Part shown: piece after piece, positions 11,112 through 39,394 of the stretch | Position numbering within the stretch: position 1 is the stretch's first letter | Layout: each line of letters starts with the position of its first letter | IMG/VR virus record: IMGVR_UViG_3300028840_008185 | Coordinates: 62,001-126,000 of that record | Length of the DNA stretch: 64,000 nucleotides | Strand: one strand, 5' to 3' | Notes under the pieces: model-generated | What the model was told of the DNA's origin: nothing | Seen by the model: the letters and a program-made list of their open reading frames with translations, nothing else | Database searches by the model: none | Made by a program: the position numbers and the translations under genes

Positions 11112-11409
11112 CTTTCCTTATTGATCTAATGGCCAACATAGCAATCAGGAAGCCAATTAAATCGCTAATAGTATCACCAACAATTTTATTTATGAATAAC
11201 TCGTTACCCGCATATGGGAAGTTGGGTATGTTTTGAACAACCCAATGTTCAAACACTTCCCACATGAAAGCAATTCCAACAGCACCCATCCAAGCATGAC
11301 GCCTGAATACAGAGTATAACATAACCGTGATGGCTATAAACCATACTACATGGTGCAGAGAATACGTATCGAATAAACTAGTCCCTGCTTTTCCCCAAAT
11401 TAGATCCAT
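10999..11409 (-). CDS. Small membrane protein
   Basis: 3 TM helices; HH, WEVFE and GD residues; overlaps rpsU. Confidence 0.55.
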   Translation of the reverse strand: MDLIWGKAGTSLFDTYSLHHVVWFIAITVMLYSVFRRHAWMGAVGIAFMWEVFEHWVVQNIPNFPYAGNELFINKIVGDTISDLIGFLIAMLAIRSIRKDENERRQKTSLEEEREKRAQSEAIGGGSQGRRSGRGD

Positions 11410-12727
11410 CTTGCATAGCTTTCTTAAATAACTCCTCTAAGCTCTTATCTGGGTGTACAGGAACCTGAGTCTCTTTCGGTTCCAAAGAAGCCAGATTGGA
11501 GTGCAGGTTAATGAGGGCAGCATTGCAATACTTACGAGAAACTTCTAAGTCCACAACGCTTTCCTCAATAATCTCGCCATCTTTTATATTACAGTCCAGA
11601 AGAGGCGTGAGGTTTTCTTCTGGTTCAACCGCTCCCTCTATTGCTAATAGATGTTTCCACTCACCATTTCGCTGATCCAAGAAGACTTGTTTGCGGCCAG
11701 GAAAGGTCTTCTTGCCTGCGGACAGTTTCATAAGTGGTCTATCATCTGTATCGTCATATACAACTTTATACACAGCCCCCAGAGAAGGAACATCTCTGGA
11801 AACAACAAGCTCAGTGCCCACAGCAAAAGTGTCGATAGGGGCACCACAACGGGCCAGGTTGTCTATGGCATATTCGTTGAGGTCATTAGACACAATAATC
11901 TTAGCTGACTGCTTGCCATTACTATCCAAAATTCCCCTAACTTTTTTGGACAATGTTTCCAGATTTCCAGAGTCCAGCCTTACTCCTTGTAGTAGCGGAA
12001 TTTGTGCGGCATAAACAGCGCCCATGTCCGTATCGTAGGTGTCAATTAGTAACACAGGGCTTCTATACACATCCTTAAAATCACTGAACGCTCTGGATTC
12101 ACTCTTAGAAACCATGACCCACATATGAGACATTGTTCCAGCAACAGGGATGCCGTATGTTCTGCCCGCCTCAACATTGGAGGTTGCCGCAAACCCAGCA
12201 AGATAGGCAGCTCGGGCTGCTCTAATAGCAGCTTCATGGTGGGTTCTTCTGGTGCCAAACTCTAAGACTGGTCGCCCACGGGCGGCGAGAACAATTCTCG
12301 CCGCCTTGGAGGCAACCTTAATATCATGGTTCAACACCGAAAGGGCAAAGGTTTCGGCCATATGAACTTCCGGCAGCGTTCCAGACACCCTTATAAGTGG
12401 CTCACCAGCAAAAGCAATCTCGCCTTCCGCCATCGCCCAGAAGTCACCCCTGAAGGAGAAATCTTCCAAGTATTTAGCGAAGTTAGACATAGAGAAAGCT
12501 GGCTTGAGAGCTTTAACTTCCCTGAGATACTTGATGTCGTCTGCCGTGAATCGCAGGCTGGTGAGGAAGTCTCTAATCTCCTCGGTCCCAGCCATCACGA
12601 GAAACCTTCTCTCTGGGGGCAACTTCCTCACAAAACCTTCACAAGTCACTTTCTTTTTGTGAAGACCTTTCACATAGTAAGCCGCCATCATTGTGAGCTG
12701 ATAAAGGTCAGTCTTTAAAGCGTCCAT
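11378..12727 (-). CDS. pncB: Nicotinate phosphoribosyltransferase
   Basis: TDLYQLTM, EFGTRRTH, TSNV, GTMSH (phospho-His), IDTYDT, VRLDSG, SNDLNE. Confidence 0.95.
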   Translation of the reverse strand: MDALKTDLYQLTMMAAYYVKGLHKKKVTCEGFVRKLPPERRFLVMAGTEEIRDFLTSLRFTADDIKYLREVKALKPAFSMSNFAKYLEDFSFRGDFWAMAEGEIAFAGEPLIRVSGTLPEVHMAETFALSVLNHDIKVASKAARIVLAARGRPVLEFGTRRTHHEAAIRAARAAYLAGFAATSNVEAGRTYGIPVAGTMSHMWVMVSKSESRAFSDFKDVYRSPVLLIDTYDTDMGAVYAAQIPLLQGVRLDSGNLETLSKKVRGILDSNGKQSAKIIVSNDLNEYAIDNLARCGAPIDTFAVGTELVVSRDVPSLGAVYKVVYDDTDDRPLMKLSAGKKTFPGRKQVFLDQRNGEWKHLLAIEGAVEPEENLTPLLDCNIKDGEIIEESVVDLEVSRKYCNAALINLHSNLASLEPKETQVPVHPDKSLEELFKKAMQDGSNLGKSRD

Positions 12728-12728
12728 A

Positions 12729-12857
12729 TTACCACCATATCTCCTGTTCTGGGAACAGAAATTTGCGTCCCCATCGATCATAGACCAAAACCCACTCGTC
12801 ATTATAATAAAATTCGTGGATATAAACCCTACCCAAAACAGGATTCCAGCCGGCCAT
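12729..12857 (-). CDS. 42-aa aromatic-rich microprotein
   Basis: Hand translation MAGWNPVLG...EIWW; exactly fills the gap between genes. Confidence 0.5.
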   Translation of the reverse strand: MAGWNPVLGRVYIHEFYYNDEWVLVYDRWGRKFLFPEQEIWW

Positions 12858-13315
12858 TAGAAATACCAGTTTGGCCAAGGCCCCATTTTTGCTTCATCCC
12901 ACTGATTAAACACGAGCCTCAACTCTCGTCTTGCGATCAGCATTTCCTGCATCAGGCGAAAATAAGCCCGTTTGCGCTTTTCGTATTCAGCATCGCTTCT
13001 TATAGGGCGAGGTTTATACTGTCCCTCTTCCTTTCCACGAGGCGGGCGCACCAGCCCGGAAGAAACTGAAACTGGCTCGGGGGTGATAATTCCCCTGTCG
13101 ATTAGTTCCTGTCGCTTTCTAGCGCTGGCTTCCTTAGTTGATAGAGCCACGGGATTTCCCTTTTTGATAAATAGCTCTGGGTTTTTGGACGGTCTAATCA
13201 TACCTACATAGATGAGGGCATTCCTTCTAGCAGCACACTCTTCGTCAGTAGCAACCGGCAACTCATCATGAACATCATTAGCATTAAGAATTTTACTCAT
13301 CTTTGTTTCTCCCAA
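12857..13315 (-). CDS. Hypothetical protein with internal repeat
   Basis: ECAARRNALIYVGMIRP / EASARKRQELIDRGIITP. Confidence 0.6.
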   Translation of the reverse strand: MGETKMSKILNANDVHDELPVATDEECAARRNALIYVGMIRPSKNPELFIKKGNPVALSTKEASARKRQELIDRGIITPEPVSVSSGLVRPPRGKEEGQYKPRPIRSDAEYEKRKRAYFRLMQEMLIARRELRLVFNQWDEAKMGPWPNWYF

Positions 13316-14184
13316 AATCGTTTGCGTTCGTCGGGAACTTTATTCAAATTCTCCTCAGTGTTTAGTTTAGTATTATATACATTATCTATGCTAAATTCAA
13401 CTCCGTGAGACCTGATGTCTTCACGGTCAATGGCCTTTCTAGCGTAGTTCATTATGATGGTTGCGGCACTTACATTAACCTGCATATTTTGGGGCGCCGA
13501 GAGCGCCCTGTCTGCACAAGAAAGCTCGGAGTTGAAACCATCTTCACTGTCTATGAGTTCTGGATAGTGATCCATAACACAGGGCAAACTGAATTCTCCA
13601 ACCGCATTACCACTAAAAGGGCCAGCCTTTATAATTCCATAGTGTCCTCTCCTAGTTGGCGCGTAGCCACAGACAACCTGCCCCGCCTTTTCTTCGTTTC
13701 CAGAATCAATCCAGAACTTAGCATGAAAGTCTTCAGTTGTAAACCACTCATGTATTACCCTACGAGAGGCGTTATTATCCACACAGCCTATCACCATATA
13801 GGCAGAATCACTCCCGATTGAGTAGTGATTCAGAGCATCATTTATATCCTCCACCTTCTCTAAATCATTGGGGATTGCTTTAATCTCCAAACCAAAAGCG
13901 GAAGAATATCTTTCCGCCATCACCATGGCCTTGTTCTTGGAGATGTCCTGCATAATAAAGTGCTGTCTTTTAAGATTCTTTTCCTCGACCATATCTCCAT
14001 CGGCCAGAATTAGATTTACAGTTCTGCGCTCACCAGAATCGTTTTTGACTTTTACATACCTAGCCAAATGGGGGATCAAGTGCCCACCAGTCCCGCCACA
14101 ACCAATAACAAGAATGGTTCTGACGGGCCTATAGCCGGCCAGAGAATAAACTTTCTGGAGTATCTTAATTTTCTTCGCAGCCAT
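13297..14184 (-). CDS. ThiF/E1 ubiquitin-activating-like enzyme (PRTRC ThiF type)
   Basis: IGCGGTGG, DGDMVEEKNLKRQ, CVDN, WIDSGN, catalytic-type LSCAD. Confidence 0.92.
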   Translation of the reverse strand: MAAKKIKILQKVYSLAGYRPVRTILVIGCGGTGGHLIPHLARYVKVKNDSGERRTVNLILADGDMVEEKNLKRQHFIMQDISKNKAMVMAERYSSAFGLEIKAIPNDLEKVEDINDALNHYSIGSDSAYMVIGCVDNNASRRVIHEWFTTEDFHAKFWIDSGNEEKAGQVVCGYAPTRRGHYGIIKAGPFSGNAVGEFSLPCVMDHYPELIDSEDGFNSELSCADRALSAPQNMQVNVSAATIIMNYARKAIDREDIRSHGVEFSIDNVYNTKLNTEENLNKVPDERKRFWEKQR

Positions 14185-14185
14185 T

Positions 14186-15226
14186 TTAGAACTTCTTTCC
14201 TCTATGATCAGTTGGCTCGGCTTCAACGCGCTGGCCACGCTCCACATACCACTGCTTCTCGCCATCCTTTACAAACCAGAGCTTATCATCCTCTCTGACA
14301 TAAAACCCCTCATCCTCATCATCGTCATCATCGTCATCGGGTAGATAATGCATGCTGTGGCCAAGATGCTCATCATCAAAGAGTTTAGCTACATCATCGA
14401 TTTCATCTATCTCTGCACCAGAACCAAACATCGAAATCTGTCTGCCGGGCCAACCGCCGCCGGGAAAAGTGTACGCTTGGTTGCCGCCCTTGCCCCTGGT
14501 TCTTTTGGTCTTCTTCGGCTTTTTCTTCTTTATTCTATCGACCCAATCGCTCGGGAAATTTTCGGCGTGATAAAGCTCATCGTCCATCTCGAACAAATCT
14601 TCAACATCTACTTCATACTCTCTACCACCTACCACCAAGCGCAACACCATGTCTGGGAAGAAATCAGTGATGCTTCCAATCACTCCATAGAAACGATCAG
14701 ACTTCTCATCTGCATCATCAACCATAGAGAATGAAGCGCCCATGTTACCGTGGCTATGAATCTCAAAGACAAGAATCTTTGAATCATATTCGGGGTCATT
14801 CTTGTAATTTACAGACGCCCCACTAACCACCTGCTTAGGGCAGTGAAGAATATATTTCTCTTCTTTTTGATCGTAGTAGAACTGTAAGAACACTTCGCTT
14901 GAGTGTTTCCTATAGATGCGACGGAAGAAGGCCACAGTAGTCCCCAAAAGATTGATGGGAATCTTTGGAACATTAAGCTCCCAACCACTAACCATGGTTT
15001 CATCCAGACCAGGGACGGCCACCTTGGCAATTCTCGAATCAAAAGTCCCAAGCCTATTAATCCTGCGCTCCCAAAGACCATCACCCTGAAGAACATATAT
15101 GATCTTCTTCTTGCAGTCTTCTGGGATGCTTTCTACGTAGTGGCCAACCATCATCTTCTGGAGAGCCAGTCTCTTGTCCTTGTCCACCTTTGGCTTCGGC
15201 TTCTTATAACTTCCCCACACGCTCAT
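14186..15226 (-). CDS. Prokaryotic JAB deubiquitinase-like protein (PRTRC A type) with acidic tail
   Basis: SSEVF; EIHSHGNMGASFSMVDDADE; poly-Asp tail. Confidence 0.85.
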   Translation of the reverse strand: MSVWGSYKKPKPKVDKDKRLALQKMMVGHYVESIPEDCKKKIIYVLQGDGLWERRINRLGTFDSRIAKVAVPGLDETMVSGWELNVPKIPINLLGTTVAFFRRIYRKHSSEVFLQFYYDQKEEKYILHCPKQVVSGASVNYKNDPEYDSKILVFEIHSHGNMGASFSMVDDADEKSDRFYGVIGSITDFFPDMVLRLVVGGREYEVDVEDLFEMDDELYHAENFPSDWVDRIKKKKPKKTKRTRGKGGNQAYTFPGGGWPGRQISMFGSGAEIDEIDDVAKLFDDEHLGHSMHYLPDDDDDDDEDEGFYVREDDKLWFVKDGEKQWYVERGQRVEAEPTDHRGKKF

Positions 15227-16745: not shown

Positions 16746-16748
16746 GCC

Positions 16749-17003: not shown

Positions 17004-17019
17004 ATTGAAACCTCGTAGT

Positions 17020-19036: not shown

Positions 19037-19081
19037 AAGAGCGAAAAAAATCAAATATCCCGCTCCACACGCGCAATTTTT
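19037..19081. promoter_or_regulatory. 45-bp dispersed intergenic motif, copy A
   Basis: 35/45 identical to 61522-61566. Confidence 0.6.
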
Positions 19082-21422: not shown

Positions 21423-21425
21423 ACT

Positions 21426-29664: not shown

Positions 29665-29665
29665 T

Positions 29666-30070: not shown

Positions 30071-30622
30071 TCACGGCATCTCCTTGAGACTCTCCACGAG
30101 CTTTCGTGATTCCAGATATTCCAAAACCGCCTTCGGAACCATGTGGGAAACATCTTTTCCTTGTTTAAGGAGCCAGCGTATATAAGAAGAACGAATCTGC
30201 AACACTGGATTGCTGGCGTATAGCTGGGCAGGAACCCACATAATATCCGCCAACTCTCTAATTTCATCACTCTTATACCACTTTTTATCAAACTCAAAGA
30301 ACAGGTCATCACCCAAGATAAGAGTATAGCGAGCTTCCGGATAGTCTGCAATTAAGTATTTCAACAAGTCGTAAGTTCTTCCAGTGTTTATTTCCTTTTC
30401 ATAATCTACAGCCATGACATTATGAGGGAAAAGCTTCCTAACCATGATGTTGCACATATATAACCGATTATAAAAAGACAGCATCTTATCTTTGAACGGA
30501 TGCTTATAGCAGGGAGCAACCAAAATCTCATCGAAATCTTCCCTGGCCAGAGCATATTGAATCATTGCAGCATGGCCTATGTGGGGCGGATTGAAGCTTC
30601 CTCCTACAATTCCTATTCTCAT
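30071..30622 (-). CDS. nadD: Nicotinate-nucleotide adenylyltransferase
   Basis: GGSFNPPHIGH, ILGDD, IRSSYIR. Confidence 0.9.
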   Translation of the reverse strand: MRIGIVGGSFNPPHIGHAAMIQYALAREDFDEILVAPCYKHPFKDKMLSFYNRLYMCNIMVRKLFPHNVMAVDYEKEINTGRTYDLLKYLIADYPEARYTLILGDDLFFEFDKKWYKSDEIRELADIMWVPAQLYASNPVLQIRSSYIRWLLKQGKDVSHMVPKAVLEYLESRKLVESLKEMP

Positions 30623-30632
30623 TTTAATCTCC

Positions 30633-31115
30633 CTAGTGTGGAACCGGTCTATCACACTCTATAACTATGACCTTGAAACCTTCGTATTCGCTGGGCAAGT
30701 CGGACTTTGAGCCATCTATTAAGTAAGCTTCGATGACTTCCTCACCATCTTCAAGCCCTATACCACAGCCCCACATATTACCATCGGTGTGGTTCATACT
30801 AAAAGAATCCACAGCTCTTTCTATTGGGCTCGGCTCTTCCAGAGCCCTTTCCCAGCCATATACCAATGGCGGATCCACACGCACTTCCTCATAGAGAACA
30901 ACCTCACCCTTTTTAACTGCTTCAATTTGACTTTGGAGCCAACCTATCGCACTTTCAGCAGCATTCACGAAAAGTATTGAGGCAGCGGTTTTTCCCATTT
31001 GCCATGCCATTCCTGGAGGGGGCAAAGCCCCAAAACCAAATTCTCTTTTTGGCGTGTCTTCTGGCAGTGGACAAGGGCTGGGAGGAACAGAATCCTCAAA
31101 GTCTCTCTTACCCAC
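30633..31115 (-). CDS. Hypothetical protein
   Basis: 160 aa, coupled to vWA gene. Confidence 0.5.
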   Translation of the reverse strand: MGKRDFEDSVPPSPCPLPEDTPKREFGFGALPPPGMAWQMGKTAASILFVNAAESAIGWLQSQIEAVKKGEVVLYEEVRVDPPLVYGWERALEEPSPIERAVDSFSMNHTDGNMWGCGIGLEDGEEVIEAYLIDGSKSDLPSEYEGFKVIVIECDRPVPH

Positions 31116-31899
31116 CGAAACCTCCCATTGCCGTCTTGCTAAAGTTCATGCTGCTTTGGCTGGCCTGAACTGCACTCTTGCTGAACAACTGGAAAGCCCT
31201 GCGAATTTCAGTTGGGGTGTTCTGTGGCGTGAGAATCCACTCGTCCCTGAGCCCCATCTCTTTGAAAACCTCACGAAAGCTTGTAGCACCACCATCATCA
31301 AAACCCATGGCCGCAACGATATGATTTTCTTGGCCAAGCATATCAGCCACAATGTTCTTTACAGCCGCAGCATCATGGCGACTGGAGTGTAGGTCACGTC
31401 CATCAGTCATAACAAGAGAAATCGTTCTCACAGGAACTCCGTTGTCCGCAAACTCGAAAGTCTTGGCGAGAACAGTGCCCAGAAAAGAAACTGTTTCATC
31501 ATAAAGGGGCGTGCCCTGATTGGGGTCGTAATTGCTTCTATCCATTTCAACGGCTTGATCAAGCGAACAATACGGATAAAGAACCCCGCCGTTCAAGTAT
31601 CGAGTATGGGCCAAGATATTATCCTGCTGCTTGGAATCCGTCAAAGCACGAATCAACTCATTGTGGCCATCACGAATCGGCTGGGCATTCCCAGAGAATC
31701 GAATAGAACCAGAATCATCAACCATTACGGAAACAAGCACAACCTCACTTGCCTCGACATCATCAACATCCACACCCAAGCCAGCCTGAATCTGCTGACC
31801 AATATCATGAACCATTAGAGCCTGGGAAGACTCAGGAGAAAGAAGCCCTTCATCCTGAGCATCTTCAAAAAGCTCATTAATATTCTTGCTTTCACTCAT
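31108..31899 (-). CDS. vWA domain protein (TerY-like)
   Basis: MIDAS DDSGS, GTPLYD, MTDGRD. Confidence 0.8.
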   Translation of the reverse strand: MSESKNINELFEDAQDEGLLSPESSQALMVHDIGQQIQAGLGVDVDDVEASEVVLVSVMVDDSGSIRFSGNAQPIRDGHNELIRALTDSKQQDNILAHTRYLNGGVLYPYCSLDQAVEMDRSNYDPNQGTPLYDETVSFLGTVLAKTFEFADNGVPVRTISLVMTDGRDLHSSRHDAAAVKNIVADMLGQENHIVAAMGFDDGGATSFREVFKEMGLRDEWILTPQNTPTEIRRAFQLFSKSAVQASQSSMNFSKTAMGGFGG

Positions 31900-32437
31900 T
31901 TGATTCCTCCAAATCATAAACATACACATCGCACGCTGTAAGCAAAGCTCCGATAAGCTCACTTACAATTCCCCAATCTCCGCCGCCCAAACCGCAACCA
32001 ATTCGCGGCATATGGATTGAAAGGTGAGTGTTAGTGGGCGGCAGAACCATACGACTCTTTAGATGACAATAGTGACCAATCCAGTTGTTCAAATCAGCCA
32101 GACATGCACAAAGCATATCATACCTAACGGCAACTGGATGGTCTGGAGCAGTGTATCCCTCTTGTGCGATCATGTTGCACACATAGAGCGGACCTTCCTT
32201 TTTAGGATCTTTCACCTGGACGAGTTGTATTTGCCCCAGCGGCAGCGTTTTGTTTGTGTCGTCCGTAGCCCACTTGAACCACTCTCTATACTTTCTCTCT
32301 GGTTCAGGCCACTTGTTAGACAGGGCAACAACAAAACCGCTCCCCCAACCTCCAAGATCATTACAAATATGAGCGATGATTCTCGCTCCCTTATTAACCT
32401 GGGGCTCTGTGGCATCGCCAGTTAGGTAGTGTATCAT
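31892..32437 (-). CDS. Macrodomain ADP-ribose hydrolase (TARG1/DarG/Poa1-like)
   Basis: GDAT, IAHICNDLGGWGSGF, MPRIGCGLGGGDW. Confidence 0.9.
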   Translation of the reverse strand: MIHYLTGDATEPQVNKGARIIAHICNDLGGWGSGFVVALSNKWPEPERKYREWFKWATDDTNKTLPLGQIQLVQVKDPKKEGPLYVCNMIAQEGYTAPDHPVAVRYDMLCACLADLNNWIGHYCHLKSRMVLPPTNTHLSIHMPRIGCGLGGGDWGIVSELIGALLTACDVYVYDLEESNE

Positions 32438-33459
32438 AGGGTAATCCCATCCCAGGTGGTAATTGGGTCAGTAGATTTAACAACATGCATCCCAGCCTTC
32501 TGGAACCTCTCGAAAGCCTCGTTAGCCTGGTCGGTGAAATCGATGCCAGGAATCACAACCGGAGAGGTGCAATCCTCCAGAAGATAAACCTTCTTGACCA
32601 GCTTGGGATCCTTGGTGTTAATCTCATTGAGCAGATCGTCAATCGTCCAAGCAACACAGTGAGACTTAGCCTGGCCAGCAATCACAACCGCATCAAAGTT
32701 GAGCAGCTTCTCGATAAAAGCAGTGTTCTTCTGGGCAATAGCAACGCCCTTTGCGGTGGTAAGAACTTCTGGACGAAGCACCGAATAGTTCTCAGTCAAG
32801 GGATTTCCACCCTTAATCTGGAAGTCGGTCTGGCTTCCACGAGCGATGTCATGGAAAAAGATGGCTTCTTCAAGAAGGGGAACAAGCGCATGGCCAACTC
32901 CACCAAGCATCGCGTGGTGTGGCCAGATAAGCAAAGCATACTTGCCCTCGTCAGCGAGAGTCTGTGTGTAGTGAAGGGCATACTTATGAAGCCCGGTGTA
33001 GCTGGCGTTAAGAACGCTGGCCATAACCGGATTCACCTTCCACACGCCCTTCTTAACATCGTCCGCAGAAATCATAGTGACACCGGGAGGAGGATGCTCA
33101 CCCTCATCATTGACCCAGAAATCCTGGTGGAAAATCTGCTTGCTCAAGTGAGTGTCCATCGTGGGAGAAATATTGGTAATTACATCCATATTCCTATAGA
33201 TAAACTCACAAAGCCGCACGATGTCTTTGTCCGCATCTACCACAGAAAGCTCCCCATCGGGATACGGCATACAGAAAGTATTCTGGCAGTCAATAGCAAT
33301 CAAGCAGACGCGAAGCTTATCTTTGGCCGCAGGCTGGAGGTCATGTCGCTTGGCCCACTCCTTTGCCCTGGTGAAAATATCCTCATACTTAACATGGAAA
33401 AGCTCATTAACTTTGCTCGCATCAAAGTGCGAGGGAACCGGAAGATCCAATTTACTCAT
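32434..33459 (-). CDS. pncA: Nicotinamidase (isochorismatase fold)
   Basis: IDCQNTF (Asp), MDTH, WPHH, KGGNPLTENYS (Lys), GQAKSHCV (Cys). Confidence 0.8.
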   Translation of the reverse strand: MSKLDLPVPSHFDASKVNELFHVKYEDIFTRAKEWAKRHDLQPAAKDKLRVCLIAIDCQNTFCMPYPDGELSVVDADKDIVRLCEFIYRNMDVITNISPTMDTHLSKQIFHQDFWVNDEGEHPPPGVTMISADDVKKGVWKVNPVMASVLNASYTGLHKYALHYTQTLADEGKYALLIWPHHAMLGGVGHALVPLLEEAIFFHDIARGSQTDFQIKGGNPLTENYSVLRPEVLTTAKGVAIAQKNTAFIEKLLNFDAVVIAGQAKSHCVAWTIDDLLNEINTKDPKLVKKVYLLEDCTSPVVIPGIDFTDQANEAFERFQKAGMHVVKSTDPITTWDGITL

Positions 33460-33470: not shown

Positions 33471-35327
33471 TTATGAAATCGTAAGCAGCCTAATCTCGTG
33501 TTTGGACACAACATATAGGCCATTTTTGGAAACTAGAAGGTGGCAGCCTGAATCAACAAACGGCTCAGTATCAGGAAACTCTTTAGCAACATCCAGCATC
33601 CCGCCGCCTGGTTCAACTCTAACAATGCCGTCATCTGTGGCGGCAAACAAGAAGTTCCCAGCGGCAGCCTTACCACGAATCCTACCCAGCCAAGTTCCAT
33701 CGCCTTCTATACCTATTGCCGAATCTCCAACTCTACCGTCGGATTTGATAATAACACACCTGTTAATCGTTTGGCCTTTCTCCCTTGTTGAATAGAAAAA
33801 CCATGCCCAGTCACCAGCAAAATAGCAGGTGGCATCAATCAACTGCCCTGGAATTATAGGCATCTTCACCGTATCGTTGATTCCTCCTTTATCGGCGTTG
33901 AATAGAAAACCAACATTAATATTACCCGCTCGGTAAAAACCGAAACCAAACTTGGGGCCAACCCAAAAGAGTGTTTGTCCTCTAAGCACATCTCCTATGT
34001 ATTTTGGCCCAACCCTTTCATCTCTAAACAATTGACCATCATAAGACCAATATTTATGATTCCCATTTGAATCAAAAAGCGTAAGCATATTGAGGCTATC
34101 CACAGCAACCTTGCTTGGCTGGCCGCCGGGAACTATGGAAACAAACTGACCATTACTACCAATCAACGTTTCCTTGCCCTTGATTCTAAATCTCATCGTG
34201 GGGCTCAACGAGCCCTTTACCACTTCTACTTCATTTTCCCTAATGAATCTATTATCTTTGTGATACAAATATCTCAGCTTATCATTTTGAACGGTGGAGT
34301 AGATGATGAGGCCAGGCGTCTGAAACACACGAACGCACTTGATATTGCCCCTGATTGTTTCCACAACTGCCATGGGAGAATAAGTTGCACAGCCAGGACA
34401 CACACGCTTCGCGTGAATTGTCCCGCATTTAATACAAGTTGTCCATCTTATATCCAGTAGGTTCTCTGGATACTCGCCTCTCTTGTCCTCTTGAAATAGC
34501 AGATGAAAGTGCTGAAGCATATCATCTGGTAGGACATCATAATGAGTCGCGGGCTTAGGATACTTAACCTCTGAATTAAATACCGTGATTCTCTTCAGCG
34601 GTCTCTCGCCCTGCTTAACTCTCTTTGATTTGTCTTTTGGCTTGTAGATTCCACCATACGGGCCAACATAAAGTAAGCTCTGCATGAGCATAATGGCGTA
34701 AGCATACCAATCAGATCCCTCGTTGTGGCTCCTGGTTAGAATTGGCCTGGTTTCATTTGGGTCGCAAAGTAGCGGATCCACAAATCTTTCTGTGAAAAGA
34801 TGACAGAGAAAGCCTCCATACTGGAAACTATCCGCATCAATTATGTGAGCTTCATCGCCCTTTATCATTATGTTAAGGTCATTGAAGTCCCCTATGATTG
34901 CTCCAGCCCTATGGATCCCTTTAACCGTGGCGTGAAGATCCTTGAAGACTTCAATAACATCTTCGTTGCTCACGCCCGCTTGTCTGTATGAGCGATCAGA
35001 ATACTTCAGGAGAACTTCGCAGCCTTTAAGAAAGGGCATCACATAGCCAACTACTTCTTTGCCGTTTTTGTTGGTGAGTATGCCATGGGGAGCTACGACC
35101 CTGCCCGGCAGATTCTTGGGAAACGCGGGAAGCTTCGTTTGGTGCTCGGCTATTCTTATCTTGGCCGCTTGTTGTTCATGGGGGAAGCCTCGGAAATCTG
35201 GGTGGTTGGGCTGTTTGAAAACCTTGAAGGCCATGTTGCCCTTGGCGAAAATATCTGCCTCGCCACCCTTGCCGATTGAATCGGCGGGATTAAGACGATA
35301 CTGCTTGCCGTTCAGATATACTATCAT
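33471..35327 (-). CDS. Ser/Thr kinase with Zn ribbon and beta-rich C-terminus (TerY-K-like)
   Basis: IGKGGEADIF, AFKVFK, GDFNDLNI, IDADS; CIKC...CPGC. Confidence 0.8.
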   Translation of the reverse strand: MIVYLNGKQYRLNPADSIGKGGEADIFAKGNMAFKVFKQPNHPDFRGFPHEQQAAKIRIAEHQTKLPAFPKNLPGRVVAPHGILTNKNGKEVVGYVMPFLKGCEVLLKYSDRSYRQAGVSNEDVIEVFKDLHATVKGIHRAGAIIGDFNDLNIMIKGDEAHIIDADSFQYGGFLCHLFTERFVDPLLCDPNETRPILTRSHNEGSDWYAYAIMLMQSLLYVGPYGGIYKPKDKSKRVKQGERPLKRITVFNSEVKYPKPATHYDVLPDDMLQHFHLLFQEDKRGEYPENLLDIRWTTCIKCGTIHAKRVCPGCATYSPMAVVETIRGNIKCVRVFQTPGLIIYSTVQNDKLRYLYHKDNRFIRENEVEVVKGSLSPTMRFRIKGKETLIGSNGQFVSIVPGGQPSKVAVDSLNMLTLFDSNGNHKYWSYDGQLFRDERVGPKYIGDVLRGQTLFWVGPKFGFGFYRAGNINVGFLFNADKGGINDTVKMPIIPGQLIDATCYFAGDWAWFFYSTREKGQTINRCVIIKSDGRVGDSAIGIEGDGTWLGRIRGKAAAGNFLFAATDDGIVRVEPGGGMLDVAKEFPDTEPFVDSGCHLLVSKNGLYVVSKHEIRLLTIS

Positions 35328-35985
35328 GCAACCCTTCCTTGAGACAAGGTAAGAAACAGAGTCTTAAACATAAGATTCTGGCCCAAATCAGACCTATTTC
35401 TGGCAAAATTAACACCCATCCAGAATATTGCCGGGGATACAGCCCCGACATGAGGAGCAATGGACACTCGTAAGTCTGAAGTATAAACCAGTTTAATCAC
35501 TTTAGCCATTTTCTCAAACCCCAAGACACCAGACCTAGCAAAGTGTCGTCCTCATCGTCAAAGGTCCAAAGCTCATTTAGGTTGTTGAAAAACAAACCAG
35601 TGAGGAGACGCCAAAAGTTAAGGGTCCTTTTTGACGCAGAACGAATTGGCTCAATCATTTCCCCACCTGCTTAATCCCCATCCACCTAATGTCCCCATAA
35701 GTAGTTTGTGTCCAGCAAGAACTATGCTTGGTCTAATATAGTTCAACAGGAAGTTGCCCATATTATATGTGGCGGCACTCACTTGTTTCTCACTTAGCCA
35801 TTTTCGCCTGTGATCGGCCCAAATTGGAATTATCACCATGAGTAGCCCCAACAAAAATCTCTTGGACGAAGCGCATGCACAAATAAATCACCAAGATGGT
35901 ATAGGGGATGCGACTCAAACTGAAATGCAAACTGAACCCAGAGTTTATGGCGATGCCGGTGGTTATTACTATTATCTATTTTCAT
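35324..35985 (-). CDS. Four microproteins between kinase and PP2C (35324-35524, 35497-35658, 35651-35854, 35833-35985)
   Basis: Two found by hand: MIEPIRS (53 aa) and MKIDNS...KLWVQFAFQFE (50 aa). Confidence 0.5.
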
Positions 35986-36805
35986 CTTTCCGTCTTATAG
36001 CAACCACGGTTGTATCATCCTTCAGGTGTCCATGCTGACGAGTAGCCACGCCATCAACTACCTTCACCACTTCTTTATTTATCCTGACCAGGCGCCTTTG
36101 TAAAGCCATTTTGTTGGTGAAGTATTTGTCCTTTGTCCAGAACTGGCTAAGTGGCCCAACCAACTCATCTTTGCCTGGGATACTCTTATTCTCGGCAGCC
36201 TGAAAGTCATCAAGCCCATCTGTCCCAATCACTAAGCTCTGGAAATTTTCAGCAAGGATTATCTCATTAACTTGAAACTTGGGGTTCCTAAACCGTTCAT
36301 CAACCGCCTGCGGAACAATACCGTATGAGGAATAGGGTGGGGCATTATTGGGAAAGGGGCCAATAGTTTTGACCTCTCCGTTTAGGGCATACACACCATC
36401 ACCAATGGACGCAATAGCAACCCAATACTTAGTAATGATGGCCACCATACAGGTGAATAGGAAATAGTCTTTAACAACCCCGACCAATTTCTCCTCAACT
36501 TTTCCTGTCCCCCAGATCATTTTCACGGCCAAGTCGGTGATATTGACGTTCAATTCCACGAGCCCCGTCACTTCCGTTTTGTCGAGGTCTCCAATATCCG
36601 CAATAAGTCTAAGCTGGTGGGGCAACATATATGCTGCAATCTTAGCTCCCACTTCGCTGTGAGCACCGCTTCCACAACCATCACAAACTACAGCAACTAT
36701 ACTGTCTGGTCTATGGACAACATTGTAGGCGTCGTGGTTATTCTTGTTGAGCCGCAAGTGGTCTTTGCCGATCACAGAACCGGCAGCAATCTCAAACCCC
36801 TTCAT
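35972..36805 (-). CDS. PP2C-like phosphatase (TerY-P-like)
   Basis: GKDH...NHDA, VCDGCGS, IGDG, GTDG, DDTT. Confidence 0.85.
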   Translation of the reverse strand: MKGFEIAAGSVIGKDHLRLNKNNHDAYNVVHRPDSIVAVVCDGCGSGAHSEVGAKIAAYMLPHQLRLIADIGDLDKTEVTGLVELNVNITDLAVKMIWGTGKVEEKLVGVVKDYFLFTCMVAIITKYWVAIASIGDGVYALNGEVKTIGPFPNNAPPYSSYGIVPQAVDERFRNPKFQVNEIILAENFQSLVIGTDGLDDFQAAENKSIPGKDELVGPLSQFWTKDKYFTNKMALQRRLVRINKEVVKVVDGVATRQHGHLKDDTTVVAIRRKDENR

Positions 36806-37115
36806 CTTCAGCCTGTTCCTTTAGCTGGCCTCGCAACTTCTCATTTTCTTTAACCAACACTTCGGTGCCCGCTTGTAAGGCTGCAAACATCTCCCTAACC
36901 TTAGCTGTAGAGGCTAAGGTAAGTTCGTTAAGAAAAAACAGAATGCCACCAAACACCCAGCCAATTCCCGCACCGAAGTCACTCATAGTGCCTCTAAACC
37001 CATTTGCCGCATTAACAACTACCAGTGCTGCTACAACTACCATAATAACAAGACGCATGGTGTTGCCTTTATAAAAATCTCTGAGAATATCAAAAATAAT
37101 CTTTAATTTTTCCAT
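36792..37115 (-). CDS. 2-TM protein with coiled-coil tail
   Basis: Hydrophobic helices. Confidence 0.55.
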   Translation of the reverse strand: MEKLKIIFDILRDFYKGNTMRLVIMVVVAALVVVNAANGFRGTMSDFGAGIGWVFGGILFFLNELTLASTAKVREMFAALQAGTEVLVKENEKLRGQLKEQAEDEGV

Positions 37116-37127
37116 AGGTGCCTTCTC

Positions 37128-38489
37128 CTAACCAGTTGAAACTGTTTCTTTTGGCCTGCCGTTGCCCCTTTTTCTTCTTTTGAGTCTCCTCGCTGTTTTG
37201 CTTACCAGTTGTGGGCCATCTGGGCTTACGGGCTCATCACCCTCCTCTTCATTGCACACACCAGCCATCGTCTTCATGTGCTCCACAACCTCTTTCAATT
37301 CCTCAAACTTACCCTCGGTAATCGCCTCCTTGATTTCACCATACTGTCTAACAGTAATCTGGAGAGCCACTTCTCTCAAATAAGCAGGCGTCATACCTTC
37401 AGTAATTTCAGCAACTTCATCAAGATAAGCATTGGCCAGGCGCATCTCGAAAGAATCAAGGTAGGCTTTGACTATCGCTCTGCGCTGTTCAACATTGGGA
37501 AAATCAAACATGATGATCTCATCGAATCTTCCAGGGCGCCTCATCGGCTCGGGCAACTCGCCCAGATGATTCACGGCGCCCATGATTACTACGTTGCCAC
37601 TTCCCTTATATCTGTTGAGCGCTTCGACAGTGCCCAGCAGCATATCTAATCCCTGCTCTCCAATCCTATCCATATCATCAAACAAAACGACGCTCGGAGA
37701 AAGAGCCCTAAAGATCTTCTCCAAGGGAAGAGAATACTCCGACGCAAAGTTGAGAGCAGGAGCATCTATCACTATAAGCTGGCCATCGAGCATACTGGCT
37801 ATTTTAGCGGCCAGAGTCGTCTTTCCACAACCGGGCGGACCAAAAAGTAGGGAAGATCGATTGAGATTCATCTTCTGGAACCTCTTGATATTATCGAAGA
37901 ACTTTCCCTCATCGAAAGTAGAAACGTATGTATCCAGCGGAATCTCTATCTCTCTAATGCGGATGAATGTGTTCCAACCCTCTATGCCCATAACAACCGA
38001 GATGTTTTGGCCCATGTTTTCTCGAACGACTTTCGAGAAGGCATCAATAAACTTATCCTCGTCCTCTGCCCACATCCCTTCTAAAGACCCATTTTCAATA
38101 GCAAAATAGGCATCACAACCAGGCAACTCATAAAGAACAGTTCTAATATCACTGCCCTCTTCTTTCTTAACGAAAGGAGTGGAGTAAGGATAGTCAATCT
38201 CTTGTAGAGCATAATAAACAAGGCGTTCCATCCTATAAAGGATGGGCTTCAGACCAGTATCGCGCAGTCTGGACAAAAGATCCTTCTCCTCTTTTTCAAA
38301 GATCTTTTCAAGAGCATCGTAAGTGCTGGCCAAACTCATGCCCGCATATATAAGATCCTTCTTCTTGATGGCCAAATATATCTCAAAGCCAGCTCTACCA
38401 ACGGCTATGGCCTTTCTGATCTTCTCCTTGATCTTTCTCTTGTCGCGCCTATATTCTATTGTCGATTCTTTGTCGCGCTCAAACATCAT
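37128..38489 (-). CDS. Classic-clade AAA ATPase
   Basis: GPPGCGKT, VLFDDMD, second region of homology VNHLGELPEPMRRPGRFD. Confidence 0.9.
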   Translation of the reverse strand: MMFERDKESTIEYRRDKRKIKEKIRKAIAVGRAGFEIYLAIKKKDLIYAGMSLASTYDALEKIFEKEEKDLLSRLRDTGLKPILYRMERLVYYALQEIDYPYSTPFVKKEEGSDIRTVLYELPGCDAYFAIENGSLEGMWAEDEDKFIDAFSKVVRENMGQNISVVMGIEGWNTFIRIREIEIPLDTYVSTFDEGKFFDNIKRFQKMNLNRSSLLFGPPGCGKTTLAAKIASMLDGQLIVIDAPALNFASEYSLPLEKIFRALSPSVVLFDDMDRIGEQGLDMLLGTVEALNRYKGSGNVVIMGAVNHLGELPEPMRRPGRFDEIIMFDFPNVEQRRAIVKAYLDSFEMRLANAYLDEVAEITEGMTPAYLREVALQITVRQYGEIKEAITEGKFEELKEVVEHMKTMAGVCNEEEGDEPVSPDGPQLVSKTARRLKRRKRGNGRPKETVSTG

Positions 38490-39394
38490 ACCACCAGACC
38501 TTTTCTCTTCAAGTAATCTCGTGGGATTTCTGGGGGCGGCTCAGCCTTATGACGAGTGGCTTTCTCCATTTTCCTCATGGCCCTAACAACTTTACACTGC
38601 TCTTCCGTATAGCCGAACTCCTCGGGGTCAGTATCTTCCGCCAAACCCCGAATCAAGCCAAAATCTTCATCCTCTCTGCTGCACCACTCAATAGTTCCCA
38701 TCTCTTCTTGACCTGGGCGAGTGTAAGTTAGTGGAACTCCACAGAGATCTTCTAACTCTTCTTCGTCGTTGTGTTCCTCACCAACTCCCCAAAGATCTGG
38801 AGTAGGAACGGCATTGATGATCTCCTCTGGGACGCCCAGATGTTCCGCCAATTCCCATACTTCGCTCTTAAACAAGGAACCAATCCAATTAGAATCGACT
38901 TCTCCATCGCCTCCCTTTTGGTAAAACCGAACATACTGATCTTCATCCCTGTTTCCTGTTCCTTGTCTAATCCCTCCGCCAAACAACCTATTCACGAAGC
39001 GCCCAACGGGCGCCCTGATACAACTTCTAAAGCTGCCGTAAGTTGTTGGGTTCTCATTTTCATCAGGCCAAGGGAGCCCAAGACGCTCAAACTCTCGCCT
39101 AATTTGGGCACGAACCGTAAAGAACACGGGAGCCAGGTGTAGCTCTATGAAATTGAATCCAAAAGTCTTAGCAACCAATCTGGCTCGTCTAAGAGACTCG
39201 GGGGAAGAATTAACATCGCTATAAACCCCGATTACATTTTCGGAGCCAAAAGCCCTACAAGCCAGAGCAGCCACAACGGCACTATCAACGCCACCAGAAA
39301 TATCAATCTCAGCTTTGTCTGTATGAGCTTCGTTGGCCTGCTTTCTCATATACCAAACTATCTCTTCAACGAGCTTTTCGTAATCAAGAATCAT
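38486..39394 (-). CDS. nadE: NH3-dependent NAD+ synthetase
   Basis: ISGGVDSAV, GTGNRDE, KGGDG, LFKSEV, PTPDL; no glutaminase domain. Confidence 0.93.
   Translation of the reverse strand: MILDYEKLVEEIVWYMRKQANEAHTDKAEIDISGGVDSAVVAALACRAFGSENVIGVYSDVNSSPESLRRARLVAKTFGFNFIELHLAPVFFTVRAQIRREFERLGLPWPDENENPTTYGSFRSCIRAPVGRFVNRLFGGGIRQGTGNRDEDQYVRFYQKGGDGEVDSNWIGSLFKSEVWELAEHLGVPEEIINAVPTPDLWGVGEEHNDEEELEDLCGVPLTYTRPGQEEMGTIEWCSREDEDFGLIRGLAEDTDPEEFGYTEEQCKVVRAMRKMEKATRHKAEPPPEIPRDYLKRKGLVV

What the first reader, a model, noticed from the sequence alone, without database searches (positions are those of the whole stretch)
11378..39394. Complete deamidating NAD+ salvage route (PncA-PncB-NadD-NadE): candidate third NAD reconstitution pathway
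Seen: nicotinamidase (32434), nicotinate PRTase (11378; TDLYQ type, not Nampt TDSYK type), NadD (30071) and NH3-dependent NadE (38486), all with intact catalytic motifs. Known: Thoeris, DSR/SIR2 and TIR defences cleave NAD+ into ADPR + nicotinamide. The described phage counter-pathways NARP1 (Adps + Namat) and NARP2 (Nampt + Nmnat) use amidated routes. Inference: this element rebuilds NAD+ via Nam to Na to NaMN to NaAD to NAD+. PncA would also remove nicotinamide, a product inhibitor of its own PARP. This would be a distinct four-gene anti-NAD-depletion system. Caveat: the genes may simply be a captured bacterial salvage neighbourhood.
Basis: partly seen in the sequence, partly recalled or inferred. 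Interest (0 to 1): 0.9.

Follow-up and report, generated by a model that had tools for sequence, protein, structure and literature searches.

The report
Huge-phage NAD+ salvage genes with kinase module
An uncultivated phage with a genome of about 450 kb carries all four enzymes that turn nicotinamide back into NAD+ through nicotinic acid; this pathway was already reported in jumbo phages, but here three of the genes sit inside a conserved kinase/phosphatase/ADP-ribose module that has not been described.

Summary
All four ORFs are on the minus strand at the stated coordinates. They are a NAPRTase (PncB), a NadD-type adenylyltransferase, an NH3-type NadE, and a 341-aa protein that Pfam barely detects. 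That protein's profile, motifs and AlphaFold model place it among nicotinamidases.

The contig (452.6 kb, listed in IMG/VR) belongs to a clade of huge phages. A second genome of 461 kb keeps all four genes at 31-65% identity. So this is not a captured bacterial salvage neighbourhood.

- "NARP3" is already taken by PnuC+NadR (2026).
- Preiss-Handler gene sets, PARP and a counter-defence idea were published for "NAD-jumbo phages" in 2024.
- It is not a compact four-gene system. PncB lies 17 kb away.

NadE, PncA and NadD are interleaved with a PP2C phosphatase, a kinase with a beta-propeller, a vWA-like protein, a macrodomain and an AAA+ ATPase. The PP2C-kinase-PncA-vWA core also occurs in cyanobacteria, next to the NAD regulator NrtR and ADP-ribosylglycohydrolases.

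Most likely function: salvage of nicotinamide to NAD+ during infection, possibly under regulation. An anti-defence role is untested.

The parts
11378..12802 (-). PncB, nicotinate phosphoribosyltransferase (NA + PRPP -> NaMN)
   Evidence: TIGR01513 at 409 bits against a cutoff of 297; NAPRTase_N/NAPRTase domains; TDLYQ motif. Relatives at 59-87% identity lie on huge contigs, always downstream of E2-JAB-ThiF.
30071..30622 (-). NadD-type nicotinate-mononucleotide adenylyltransferase (NaMN -> NaAD). The longest ORF extends to 30655.
   Evidence: CTP_transf_like; best NCBIfam hits are all NadD models (about 100 bits, below cutoffs); GGSFNPPHIGH and IRSSYIR motifs. The ENA gene call is 183 aa.
30633..31115 (-). 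Conserved 160-aa protein of unknown function between the vWA-like gene and NadD
   Evidence: No family hit. Conserved after the vWA-like gene in relatives L090, L094 and L095.
31108..31899 (-). vWA-like protein, assigned from MIDAS-type motifs only
   Evidence: The DDSGS, conserved GTPLYD threonine and ITDG-D motifs are invariant in 21 homologues. No HMM or PDB sequence match. Follows the PncA-like gene in 39 of 80 bacterial loci and in all phage loci.
31892..32437 (-). Macrodomain protein (ADP-ribose binding/hydrolase class)
   Evidence: phmmer against PDB: 2afc, 2fg1 and 5e3b 'Macrodomain protein', E 4e-33 to 2.5e-32. Weak DarG macrodomain hit. Absent at this position in relatives.
32434..33459 (-). 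Long-form nicotinamidase-like cysteine hydrolase ('PncA'; Nam -> NA inferred)
   Evidence: Family profile hits nicotinamidases in PDB. Triad D57/K216/C268 and metal site D102/H104/H182 are conserved. AF2 model pLDDT 96.9; top 15 Foldseek hits are nicotinamidases. Curated HMM thresholds are not reached.
33471..35327 (-). Protein-kinase-like domain + CxxC...CPxC zinc ribbon + C-terminal beta-propeller
   Evidence: Weak Pkinase hit. Invariant G-loop, Lys, D147-x4-N152 and D164/D166. AF2 model pLDDT 81; best Foldseek hit is LRRK2 kinase-WD40, then beta-propellers and PknG.
35972..36805 (-). PP2C-type protein phosphatase
   Evidence: PF13672 PP2C_2, E 5.5e-17. Conserved upstream of the kinase in phage and cyanobacterial loci.
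36792..37115 (-). 107-aa protein of unknown function
   Evidence: No significant family. Homologue in L090.
37128..38489 (-). AAA+ ATPase (IetA-like by PADLOC)
   Evidence: PF00004 AAA, E 2e-19. PADLOC IetA, E 6e-17. Present in L088, absent in L090, L094 and L095.
38486..39394 (-). NadE, NH3-type NAD+ synthetase (NaAD -> NAD+)
   Evidence: TIGR00552 at 102 bits against a cutoff of 63.65; PF02540; SGGVDS motif; single domain of 302 aa. Overlaps the AAA+ gene by 4 bases.
2..916 (-). First 305 codons of a 500-aa WGR-PARP_reg-PARP protein (consumes NAD+, releases nicotinamide); cut by the window start
   Evidence: Precomputed Pfam WGR, PARP_reg and PARP on L096:11027-12529. PARP1 catalytic domain, E 1.4e-25. 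Translation of the window part.
55302..55871 (-). Tpt1/KptA RNA 2'-phosphotransferase (consumes NAD+)
   Evidence: PF01885, E 1.3e-27.

Best explanation
The window is part of an uncultivated huge phage of about 452 kb. The phage encodes the complete deamidating NAD+ salvage route, that is, a nicotinamidase step followed by the Preiss-Handler pathway:
1. A long-form nicotinamidase-like enzyme converts nicotinamide to nicotinate.
2. PncB makes NaMN from nicotinate and PRPP.
3. NadD adenylates NaMN to NaAD.
4. The single-domain NadE amidates NaAD to NAD+.

The nicotinamide comes from any cleavage of NAD+ in the infected cell. Sources include the phage's own PARP and Tpt1/KptA, and possibly host NADase defences. 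The net effect is to keep the NAD+ pool up during infection and to remove nicotinamide, which inhibits ADP-ribosyltransferases.

NadE, PncA and NadD lie in one tightly packed, co-directional 9.3-kb array. The array also holds a PP2C phosphatase, a kinase with a beta-propeller, a vWA-like protein, a macrodomain and an AAA+ ATPase. I infer that this is a phosphorylation-based control or sensing layer for the NAD+/ADP-ribose module.

Shown: gene identities, fold, catalytic residues, conservation of the arrangement, and relationship to a cyanobacterial cassette linked to NrtR. Inferred: substrate specificity, flux through the pathway, any regulation, and any anti-defence benefit.
For: Enzyme identities:
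- Family assignments.
- Nicotinamidase-like fold and active site. From established structural knowledge, the Asp-His-His metal site is what binds the free pyridine nitrogen in solved nicotinamidases. That fits nicotinamide better than NMN or NAD.

Phage nature:
- 452,619-bp contig, and a 100%-identical 318-kb IMG/VR UViG.
- All genes on one strand across more than 100 kb, with many small ORFans.
- Ribosomal protein S21, IF3, Cpn60, Lon, HNH and Phage_gp86 genes.

Conservation:
- The 461-kb relative has NadE-PP2C-kinase-x-x-PncA-NadD-...-vWA, plus E2-JAB-ThiF-x-PncB about 31 kb away.
- The 44.5-kb contig L095 has NadE-PP2C-kinase-x-serpin-PncA-NadD-...-vWA.
- L090 and L088 keep NadE upstream of the cassette.
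- In an unrelated viral contig (L005), whose PncA falls inside the bacterial clade (an independent acquisition), a NAPRTase sits immediately upstream of PP2C.
- In cyanobacteria the PP2C-kinase-PncA-vWA cassette is flanked by a divergently transcribed NrtR in 16 loci, and carries one to three ADP-ribosylglycohydrolase genes in 16 loci. NrtR is the Nudix-related regulator of NAD metabolism (PMC2330246).

NAD+ consumers in the same genome: PARP, Tpt1 and a macrodomain.

Gene packing: 4-base overlaps NadE/AAA+ and PncA/macrodomain.
Against: - No biochemical data exist for any of these proteins.
- The nicotinamidase-like protein fails the curated Pfam and NCBIfam thresholds. It carries an insertion of about 70 aa and a 45-aa N-terminal extension, so its substrate could differ.
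- NadD scores just under the curated cutoffs. It is only 31-35% identical between relatives whose other genes are 64-74% identical, and its position shifts.
- PncB is 17 kb away in another conserved neighbourhood, so co-regulation is not shown.
- In bacteria the PncA-like gene is rarely next to salvage genes: PncB-type NAPRTase in 2 of 80 loci, an L005-type NAPRTase in 1, NadD in 1.
- Much of the synteny among the huge phages may simply reflect shared ancestry.
- I saw no structural hallmark gene (capsid, terminase) in the roughly 84 kb inspected.
Confidence: 0.6

Rival explanations
1. The pathway is specifically a counter-defence, a further NARP. It rebuilds NAD+ after Thoeris, DSR, SIR2-HerA or other NADase defences cleave it. 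The kinase, PP2C and vWA proteins act as a sensor that switches it on.
For: NARP1, NARP2 and NARP3 show that phages gain from rebuilding NAD+ (bioRxiv 10.1101/2024.02.11.579819; PMC13464706). Li et al. proposed this role for NAD-jumbo phages (PMC11662467). The cyanobacterial cassette sits next to NrtR, which responds to the NAD+ cleavage product ADP-ribose (PMC2330246). A macrodomain or an ADP-ribosylglycohydrolase is present in the cassette.
Against: No experiment supports it. The four-step route costs ATP and PRPP and is slower than NARP1 or NARP2. The phage has its own heavy NAD+ consumers (PARP, Tpt1), which alone could explain the selection. No defence-system hits for the core proteins in PADLOC.
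Confidence: 0.3
2. The PncA-like enzyme is mainly part of an ADP-ribosylation signalling unit with the kinase, PP2C, vWA-like protein and macrodomain/ARH. It clears nicotinamide to relieve product inhibition of PARP and other ADP-ribosyltransferases, or it acts on another amide. Feeding PncB would be incidental.
For: Its invariable partners in phages, and its partners in 30-39 of 80 bacterial loci, are PP2C, the kinase and the vWA-like protein rather than pncB. ARH or a macrodomain is inserted in the cassette. A phage PARP is present. From general knowledge, yeast Pnc1 activates Sir2 by clearing nicotinamide.
Against: In two independent phage lineages the cassette is physically joined to NAD synthesis genes: NadE and NadD in one, NAPRTase in the other. 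NadE has no use except in the deamidated route, and PncB needs a source of nicotinate.
Confidence: 0.2
3. The contig is cellular, for example a small-genome symbiont mis-called as viral, and the genes are ordinary housekeeping NAD salvage.
For: A related 244-kb contig is deposited in NCBI inside a 'Patescibacteria group bacterium' MAG. Translation-related genes are present (S21, IF3, RF-1 domain, Cpn60). No capsid or terminase gene was seen in the parts inspected.
Against: IMG/VR lists it as a viral genome. There are no tRNA or Rfam hits in 64 kb. Most ORFs are small ORFans, all on one strand. HNH, LAGLIDADG and NUMOD3 homing-endonuclease domains, Endonuclease VII and Phage_gp86 are present. 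The same translation-related gene types are typical of published huge phages (general knowledge; PMC11662467).
Confidence: 0.08
4. The genes are a passively captured bacterial salvage neighbourhood with no selected function in the phage.
For: The PncA-like, vWA-like and kinase proteins are 47-65% identical to cyanobacterial ones.
Against: No bacterial locus has the phage arrangement. The five huge-phage PncA sequences form their own clade (support 99/95), sister to the bacterial one. PncB and NadE belong to clades found mostly on large unnamed contigs. All ORFs are intact and conserved at about 60% identity between genomes.
Confidence: 0.04

Closest known systems
'NAD-jumbo phages' with the Preiss-Handler pathway (Li et al., Microbiome 2024, PMC11662467)
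   Same: Genome above 200 kb. It encodes pncB, nadD and nadE, that is, all genes for NAD+ synthesis from nicotinate. It also carries PARP and other NAD+ consumers. A counter-defence role has been proposed but not tested. That paper also mentions phage-encoded pncA.
   Different: That work reports compact pncB-nadD-nadE clusters (for example Kuafu_71) in gut phages with Bacteroidota hosts. Here PncB is separate. The nicotinamidase is a long form that Pfam barely detects. NadE, PncA and NadD are interleaved with a PP2C/kinase/vWA/macrodomain module, which that paper does not describe.
NARP2 (Nampt + Nmnat; bioRxiv 10.1101/2024.02.11.579819)
   Same: Starts from nicotinamide and PRPP and ends in NAD+. 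Phage-encoded.
   Different: NARP2 is amidated, takes two steps via NMN, and has been shown to counter NADase defences. The present route is deamidated, takes four steps via NA, NaMN and NaAD, needs NadE and ammonia, and is untested.
NARP1 (Adps + Namat) and NARP3 (PnuC + NadR; PMC13464706)
   Same: Phage-encoded restoration of NAD+.
   Different: NARP1 re-uses ADP-ribose via ADPR-PP. NARP3 imports nicotinamide riboside. Neither enzyme set was found among the window's ORFs. The name NARP3 is already taken.
Bacterial salvage pathway I / NrtR regulon (pncA-pncB, nadD-nadE; Rodionov et al. 2008, PMC2330246)
   Same: Same four enzyme activities. The cyanobacterial relatives of the cassette sit next to an NrtR regulator.
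   Different: Bacterial operons are pncA-pncB or pncB-nadD-nrtR-nadE, without a kinase, PP2C or vWA protein. The phage has no NrtR in the window. The nicotinamidase belongs to a distinct family of about 345 aa.
vWA / Ser-Thr kinase / (FHA) / PP2C signalling operons, e.g. Deinococcus DRA0331-0334 (bioRxiv 10.64898/2026.01.23.701218)
   Same: Co-directional vWA-like, kinase and PP2C genes.
   Different: No FHA protein was detected. An NAD-salvage enzyme and ADP-ribose hydrolases are embedded. The kinase carries a zinc ribbon and a beta-propeller.
Yeast Pnc1 / Drosophila nicotinamidase (PDB 2h0r, 9u8m)
   Same: Fold, Asp-Lys-Cys triad and Asp-His-His metal site.
   Different: 13-21% identity. An extra 70-aa insertion and an N-terminal helix. 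Activity not measured.

Membership tests
Nicotinamidase (PncA/Pnc1; isochorismatase-like cysteine hydrolases) | Isochorismatase-like alpha/beta fold | tested here: met
   AF2 model pLDDT 96.9. Foldseek top 15 hits are nicotinamidases; 2wta E 2.3e-13, target TM 0.77.
Nicotinamidase (PncA/Pnc1; isochorismatase-like cysteine hydrolases) | Asp-Lys-Cys catalytic triad | tested here: met
   D57, K216 and C268 are conserved in at least 90% of 60 homologues. They align to Pnc1 D8/K122/C167 regions in the profile-PDB alignment.
Nicotinamidase (PncA/Pnc1; isochorismatase-like cysteine hydrolases) | Asp-His-His metal site that binds the pyridine nitrogen | tested here: met
   D102 and H104 (TMDTH) and invariant H182 align with the DWH and HC motifs of Pnc1.
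Nicotinamidase (PncA/Pnc1; isochorismatase-like cysteine hydrolases) | Reaches the curated family HMM thresholds | tested here: not met
   PF00857 at 19.4 bits against 27. NCBIfam PRK11609 at 17.7 bits against 174.
Nicotinamidase (PncA/Pnc1; isochorismatase-like cysteine hydrolases) | Hydrolyses nicotinamide to nicotinate | not testable with these tools
   Needs an enzyme assay.
Nicotinate phosphoribosyltransferase (PncB) | Equivalog HMM above cutoff, with N-terminal and catalytic domains | tested here: met
   TIGR01513 at 409.4 bits against 297.4. PF17767 and PF04095.
NadD (NaMN adenylyltransferase) | (H/T)xGH and ISSTxxR-type motifs in a nucleotidyltransferase fold | tested here: met
   GGSFNPPHIGH and IRSSYIR. 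PF01467, E 1.6e-11.
NadD (NaMN adenylyltransferase) | Equivalog HMM above cutoff; NaMN preferred over NMN | tested here: inconclusive
   The best models are all NadD but below cutoff (TIGR00482 at 102.1 against 112.45). Substrate preference is not testable here.
NH3-dependent NAD+ synthetase (NadE) | PP-loop SGGxDS, NAD_synthase domain above cutoff, no glutaminase domain | tested here: met
   TIGR00552 at 102 bits against 63.65. SGGVDS motif. 302 aa with a single domain.
NAD-jumbo phage (Li et al. 2024) | Phage genome above 200 kb that encodes a complete salvage or Preiss-Handler NAD+ pathway | tested here: met
   452,619-bp contig and an IMG/VR UViG. pncB, nadD and nadE present.
NARP1 / NARP2 / NARP3 | Adps+Namat, or Nampt+Nmnat, or PnuC+NadR gene pair | tested here: not met
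   No such families among the window's ORFs scanned with Pfam, NCBIfam and PHROGs. The PRTase is the nicotinate type.
NARP1 / NARP2 / NARP3 | Restores NAD+ and rescues phage from NAD+-depleting defence | not testable with these tools
   Needs plaque assays and metabolite measurements.
vWA domain | MIDAS motif DxSxS...T...D in a Rossmann-like fold | tested here: inconclusive
   The motifs are invariant.

The most novel reading that the evidence does not exclude
The conserved locus NadE-PP2C-kinase(beta-propeller)-PncA-(macrodomain/ARH)-NadD-vWA is a signal-controlled NAD+/ADP-ribose homeostasis module exchanged between cyanobacteria and huge phages. In this reading, a sensor (the vWA-like protein or the beta-propeller) detects NAD+ cleavage or ADP-ribosylation. 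It then switches the nicotinamidase-led resynthesis route on through phosphorylation. That would make it a regulated, deamidating NAD+ reconstitution system distinct from NARP1, NARP2 and NARP3.
Probability: 0.2. Interest if true: 0.75.

Novelty: new variant of a known kind. Interest (0 to 1): 0.5.

Why it matters
NAD+ depletion is one of the commonest bacterial anti-phage strategies. Three phage pathways that restore NAD+ have been demonstrated, and all of them are amidated. A working deamidating route in phages would widen that set. It would also show that huge phages can run the whole pyridine nucleotide cycle themselves, alongside their own PARP.

The part that is new here is the conserved embedding of the nicotinamidase, NadE and NadD in a kinase/phosphatase/vWA/ADP-ribose-hydrolase cassette. 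In cyanobacteria the same cassette sits next to NrtR. This suggests post-translational control of NAD+ salvage, which is not known in bacteria or phages. It also assigns a probable function to a very large family of about 345 aa: more than 8,000 clusters at 90% identity, currently labelled only 'isochorismatase'.

Tried and rejected
- DNA similarity to GenBank phages: no match for 12 kb of the locus. No protein match for a clade-conserved 351-aa ORF.
- tRNA and Rfam scans found nothing, including no NAD riboswitch.
- IMG/VR scans with PncB and NadE returned only the phage itself, so that tool could not give a co-occurrence survey.
- The genome scan with the alignment failed for lack of conserved peptide stretches. 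I repeated it with a single cyanobacterial protein.
- The Pfam scan of fused 583-aa PncA forms gave no domain for the N-terminal half. That half has no relative in the held loci.
- PADLOC gave no defence-system assignment for PncA, the kinase, PP2C or the vWA-like protein.
- PDB profile searches for the kinase and vWA-like families found nothing useful.
- The promoter/terminator scan was not informative: terminator-like sites were at the level of the shuffles.
- I considered the Aravind vWA-MoxR 'ternary' conflict systems and rejected them. Their core components (MoxR, VMAP, iSTAND) are not present, and that paper does not describe this cassette.
- I first failed to find the PARP, because the ORF listing omits ORFs that run off the window. 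It turned up when I fetched the flank.
- The supplementary tables of Li et al. are not held, so I could not count how many of their phages have pncA.

Full report
**1. What is at the coordinates**

The window has about 45% GC and a strongly negative GC skew throughout. Almost every plausible gene is on the minus strand.

- The first is a nicotinate phosphoribosyltransferase. The NCBIfam equivalog TIGR01513 scores 409 bits against a cutoff of 297. The NAPRTase_N and NAPRTase domains and the TDLYQ motif are present.
- The last is a single-domain NAD+ synthetase with the SGGVDS PP-loop. TIGR00552 scores 102 bits against a cutoff of 63.65.
- The 194-aa ORF has GGSFNPPHIGH and IRSSYIR motifs. Its best matches are all NadD models, but they fall just under the curated cutoffs. 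The public gene call starts at the internal Met, giving 30071-30622.

**2. The 'nicotinamidase' needed real testing**

By HMM alone it is a sub-threshold Isochorismatase hit: 19 bits against a cutoff of 27.

It belongs to a very large family of about 345 aa. More than 8,000 clusters match, and 2,306 representatives at the 50% level. Sources label them only 'isochorismatase' or 'nicotinamidase-related amidase'.

- A profile of 60 members has solved nicotinamidases as its five best PDB hits: yeast Pnc1 (E 2.8e-9), Acinetobacter, M. tuberculosis PncA, a further nicotinamidase entry (29iv) and Pyrococcus.
- D57, K216 and C268 (the triad) and D102, H104 and H182 (the metal site) are conserved in at least 90% of the family, and H182 is invariant.
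- The AlphaFold model is confident (pLDDT 96.9), and its top 15 Foldseek hits are all nicotinamidases.

So the protein has the fold and the active site of a nicotinamidase. It also has a 45-aa N-terminal extension and an insertion of about 70 aa. In solved nicotinamidases the metal binds the free pyridine nitrogen (established structural knowledge). This favours nicotinamide as the substrate, but the activity is inferred.

**3. Is it a phage?**

The identical protein lies on a 452,619-bp ENA contig, on a 73.8-kb JGI contig and on a 318-kb IMG/VR viral genome.

- The window has no tRNA and no Rfam match.
- It is dense in small ORFans.
- It carries Lon, an HslV-like subunit, an ATP-dependent DNA ligase, a CCA-adding enzyme, RlaP, Tpt1 and HSP20.
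- Precomputed Pfam calls on the window and its flanks add ribosomal protein S21, an RF-1 domain protein, Cpn60, IF3, peptide deformylase and a Phage_gp86 protein.
- Relatives carry HNH, LAGLIDADG and NUMOD3 domains and Endonuclease VII.

This is the gene content of published huge phages. I did not see capsid or terminase genes in the roughly 84 kb I could inspect. One relative is deposited inside a Patescibacteria MAG. I therefore leave about 8% for a cellular origin.

**4. What surrounds the genes**

NadE, PncA and NadD are not isolated. They lie in one co-directional, tightly packed array from 39394 down to 30071. The order is:

NadE, AAA+ ATPase, a 107-aa ORF, PP2C phosphatase, four small ORFs, a 618-aa kinase-like protein, the PncA-like enzyme, a macrodomain protein, a vWA-like protein, a 160-aa ORF, NadD.

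- The kinase has invariant kinase motifs, a four-cysteine zinc ribbon and a C-terminal beta-propeller. Its model's best structural match is the LRRK2 kinase-WD40 half.
- The macrodomain matches PDB macrodomain proteins at E 1e-33.
- The vWA assignment rests on invariant MIDAS-type motifs only.

PncB lies 17 kb away, directly after an E2, JAB, ThiF/E1 set.

**5.

No PARP appeared in any listed ORF. Fetching the flank showed a 500-aa WGR-PARP_reg-PARP gene that starts at window 916 and runs off the window's start. It matches the PARP1 catalytic domain at E 1.4e-25. With Tpt1/KptA at 55302-55871, the phage has at least two enzymes that consume NAD+ and release nicotinamide.

**6. Related sequences**

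Closer relatives keep the locus.
- L090 (PncA 87% identical) has NadE-x-PP2C-...-kinase-PncA-vWA-u160.
- L088 (71%) has NadE-...-AAA-PP2C-...-kinase-...-PncA-vWA, and its 91.7-kb contig probably also holds a PncB at 69% identity, inferred from equal contig lengths rather than checked directly.

More distant members are the most informative.
- A 460,879-bp JGI contig has NadE-x-PP2C-kinase-x-x-PncA-NadD-...-vWA. About 31 kb away it has Lon ... E2-JAB-ThiF-x-PncB. Identities are 59-74%, except NadD at 31%.
- A 44.5-kb contig has NadE-x-x-PP2C-kinase-x-serpin-PncA-NadD-deoxyribosyltransferase-like-...-vWA.
- A 244-kb contig shares the Lon...E2-JAB-ThiF-x-PncB-S21-ligase stretch.

Several further contigs appear in both the PncA and NadE hit lists with identical lengths. 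Equal length is only suggestive of the same contig. Two of these cases were checked directly.

The four-enzyme set is therefore a conserved trait of a clade of huge phages.

**7. The cyanobacterial connection**

The nearest named relatives of the PncA-like protein (about 65%) are cyanobacterial. In 80 genome loci, mostly cyanobacterial:
- the gene is followed by the vWA-like gene in 39;
- it is preceded by the kinase in 33-34 and by PP2C in 30-31;
- a NAPRTase lies within 6 kb in only 3 (two PncB-type, one L005-type) and NadD in 1.

In 16 loci a divergently transcribed (15 of the 16) Nudix + NrtR_WHD regulator (NrtR) flanks the cassette. In 16 loci, one to three ADP-ribosylglycohydrolase genes lie between PP2C and the kinase. 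NrtR is the ADP-ribose-responsive regulator of NAD metabolism, and in cyanobacteria the usual operon is pncB-nadD-nrtR-nadE (PMC2330246).

So the cassette is tied to NAD/ADP-ribose metabolism in bacteria as well, but it is not a salvage operon there.

A tree places the five huge-phage sequences in one clade (support 99/95), sister to the bacterial clade. The unrelated viral contig L005 falls inside the bacterial clade, so it acquired the gene independently. In L005 a NAPRTase sits immediately upstream of PP2C-kinase-PncA-vWA. Two separate phage lineages have therefore joined this cassette to NAD synthesis genes. That is the strongest contextual evidence that the enzyme feeds the Preiss-Handler route.

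**8. Mechanism**

Most likely (about 0.6), the phage runs nicotinamide to NAD+ through nicotinate, NaMN and NaAD. The nicotinamide would come from its own PARP and Tpt1 and from any host NADase.
- Shown: the identities, the fold, the catalytic residues and the conservation.
- Inferred: the substrates, the flux and a regulatory role for the kinase, PP2C and vWA-like proteins.

Whether the selective benefit is counter-defence (0.3 as a specific claim) or general support of NAD+-hungry phage functions cannot be decided from sequence. A rival reading (0.2) is that the nicotinamidase mainly serves an ADP-ribosylation signalling unit by clearing the inhibitor nicotinamide.

**9. Comparison with what is known**

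NARP1 (Adps+Namat) and NARP2 (Nampt+Nmnat) are amidated routes (bioRxiv 10.1101/2024.02.11.579819, which does not mention PncA, NadE or deamidation). NARP3 is PnuC+NadR (PMC13464706). None of these gene pairs is in the window.

Li et al. 2024 (PMC11662467) already described:
- 174 'NAD-jumbo phages' with complete salvage or Preiss-Handler pathways;
- pncB-nadD-nadE clusters;
- phage PARP;
- phage-encoded pncA in passing;
- the hypothesis that this counters NAD+ depletion.

The 2022 survey by Iyer et al. covers only NadV, NadM and NadR. I found no paper on the PP2C-kinase-nicotinamidase-vWA cassette.

**10. Verdict**

The claim of a new 'third' four-gene pathway is pre-empted by published work.

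What remains new is a variant: a long-form nicotinamidase, with NadE and NadD built into a conserved kinase/phosphatase/vWA/ADP-ribose-hydrolase module. That module is shared with cyanobacteria and conserved across a clade of huge phages.

Interest 0.5. The most novel surviving reading is a signal-regulated NAD+ reconstitution system (probability 0.2, interest 0.75 if true).

Noticed in passing
window 12857-15918 (-); L092:5953-9988; L093:6873-9990: A ubiquitin-like conjugation set (Prok-E2_D 15226-15918, JAB 14186-15226, ThiF/E1 13297-14265, then a 152-aa ORF) sits immediately upstream of PncB. The same order is kept in the 461-kb and 244-kb relatives. L093 also has a faint Prok_Ub hit nearby. 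A phage-encoded E1/E2/JAB system conserved next to an NAD gene is unexplained.
   Followed up: partly
window 2-916 (-), continuing outside the window; L096:11027-12529: A 500-aa WGR-PARP_reg-PARP gene is cut by the window edge. The ORF listing does not show it because it runs off the end.
   Followed up: yes
window 31892-32437 (-): A macrodomain protein (PDB 2afc/2fg1/5e3b, E 1e-33) is inserted between the PncA-like and vWA-like genes only in this phage. Cyanobacterial versions of the cassette carry ADP-ribosylglycohydrolases instead.
   Followed up: partly
window 7685-8035, 10818-11036, 2462-2884 (-); L096 beyond the window: Translation and chaperone genes typical of huge phages: an RF-1 domain protein, ribosomal protein S21 and HSP20. 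Just outside the window lie Cpn60, IF3, peptide deformylase, thioredoxin and a DHH phosphoesterase.
   Followed up: no
window 25200-26093, 42047-43456, 52702-53235, 55302-55871 (-): An RNA repair theme: RlaP nucleotidyltransferase, CCA-adding enzyme with an HD domain, an HD_4 protein and Tpt1/KptA. The Tpt1 product pathway could link to the macrodomain.
   Followed up: no
window 22528-23151 (-): The precomputed annotation lists PF26128 (Gad2, an anti-Gabija family) for this 207-aa protein. My own Pfam scan found nothing at E <= 0.01. The discrepancy is unresolved.
   Followed up: no
window 19080-22524, 29113-29676, 1271-1942 (-): An unusual load of proteases: a full-length Lon (TIGR00763, 781 bits), a matrixin-like metalloprotease, an HslV/proteasome-like subunit and a trypsin-like protease. 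An SLT lytic transglycosylase is also present.
   Followed up: no
window 44622-47928 (-); L088:16651-19646: A second kinase (DnaJ + Pkinase, 46888-47928) lies beside a 336-aa unknown protein and a protein like the pyruvate-kinase barrel. The trio is conserved in relative L088.
   Followed up: no
proteins P0121, P0011, P0022, P0025, P0118 (about 583 aa): Some members of the nicotinamidase-like family carry an extra N-terminal domain of about 240 aa. It has no Pfam hit and no relative in any held locus.
   Followed up: partly
window 57407-58540, 61566-62426, 40804-41964 (-): Other metabolic genes: a DFP (CoaBC-like) flavoprotein domain, an EamA-family transporter and a saccharopine-dehydrogenase-like NAD(P)-binding protein. 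Whether the transporter imports a pyridine precursor is unknown.
   Followed up: no
L012:5380-5976 and 9 other cyanobacterial loci: A conserved 198-aa protein of unknown function lies between the kinase and the PncA-like gene in Pseudanabaena-type cassettes.
   Followed up: no
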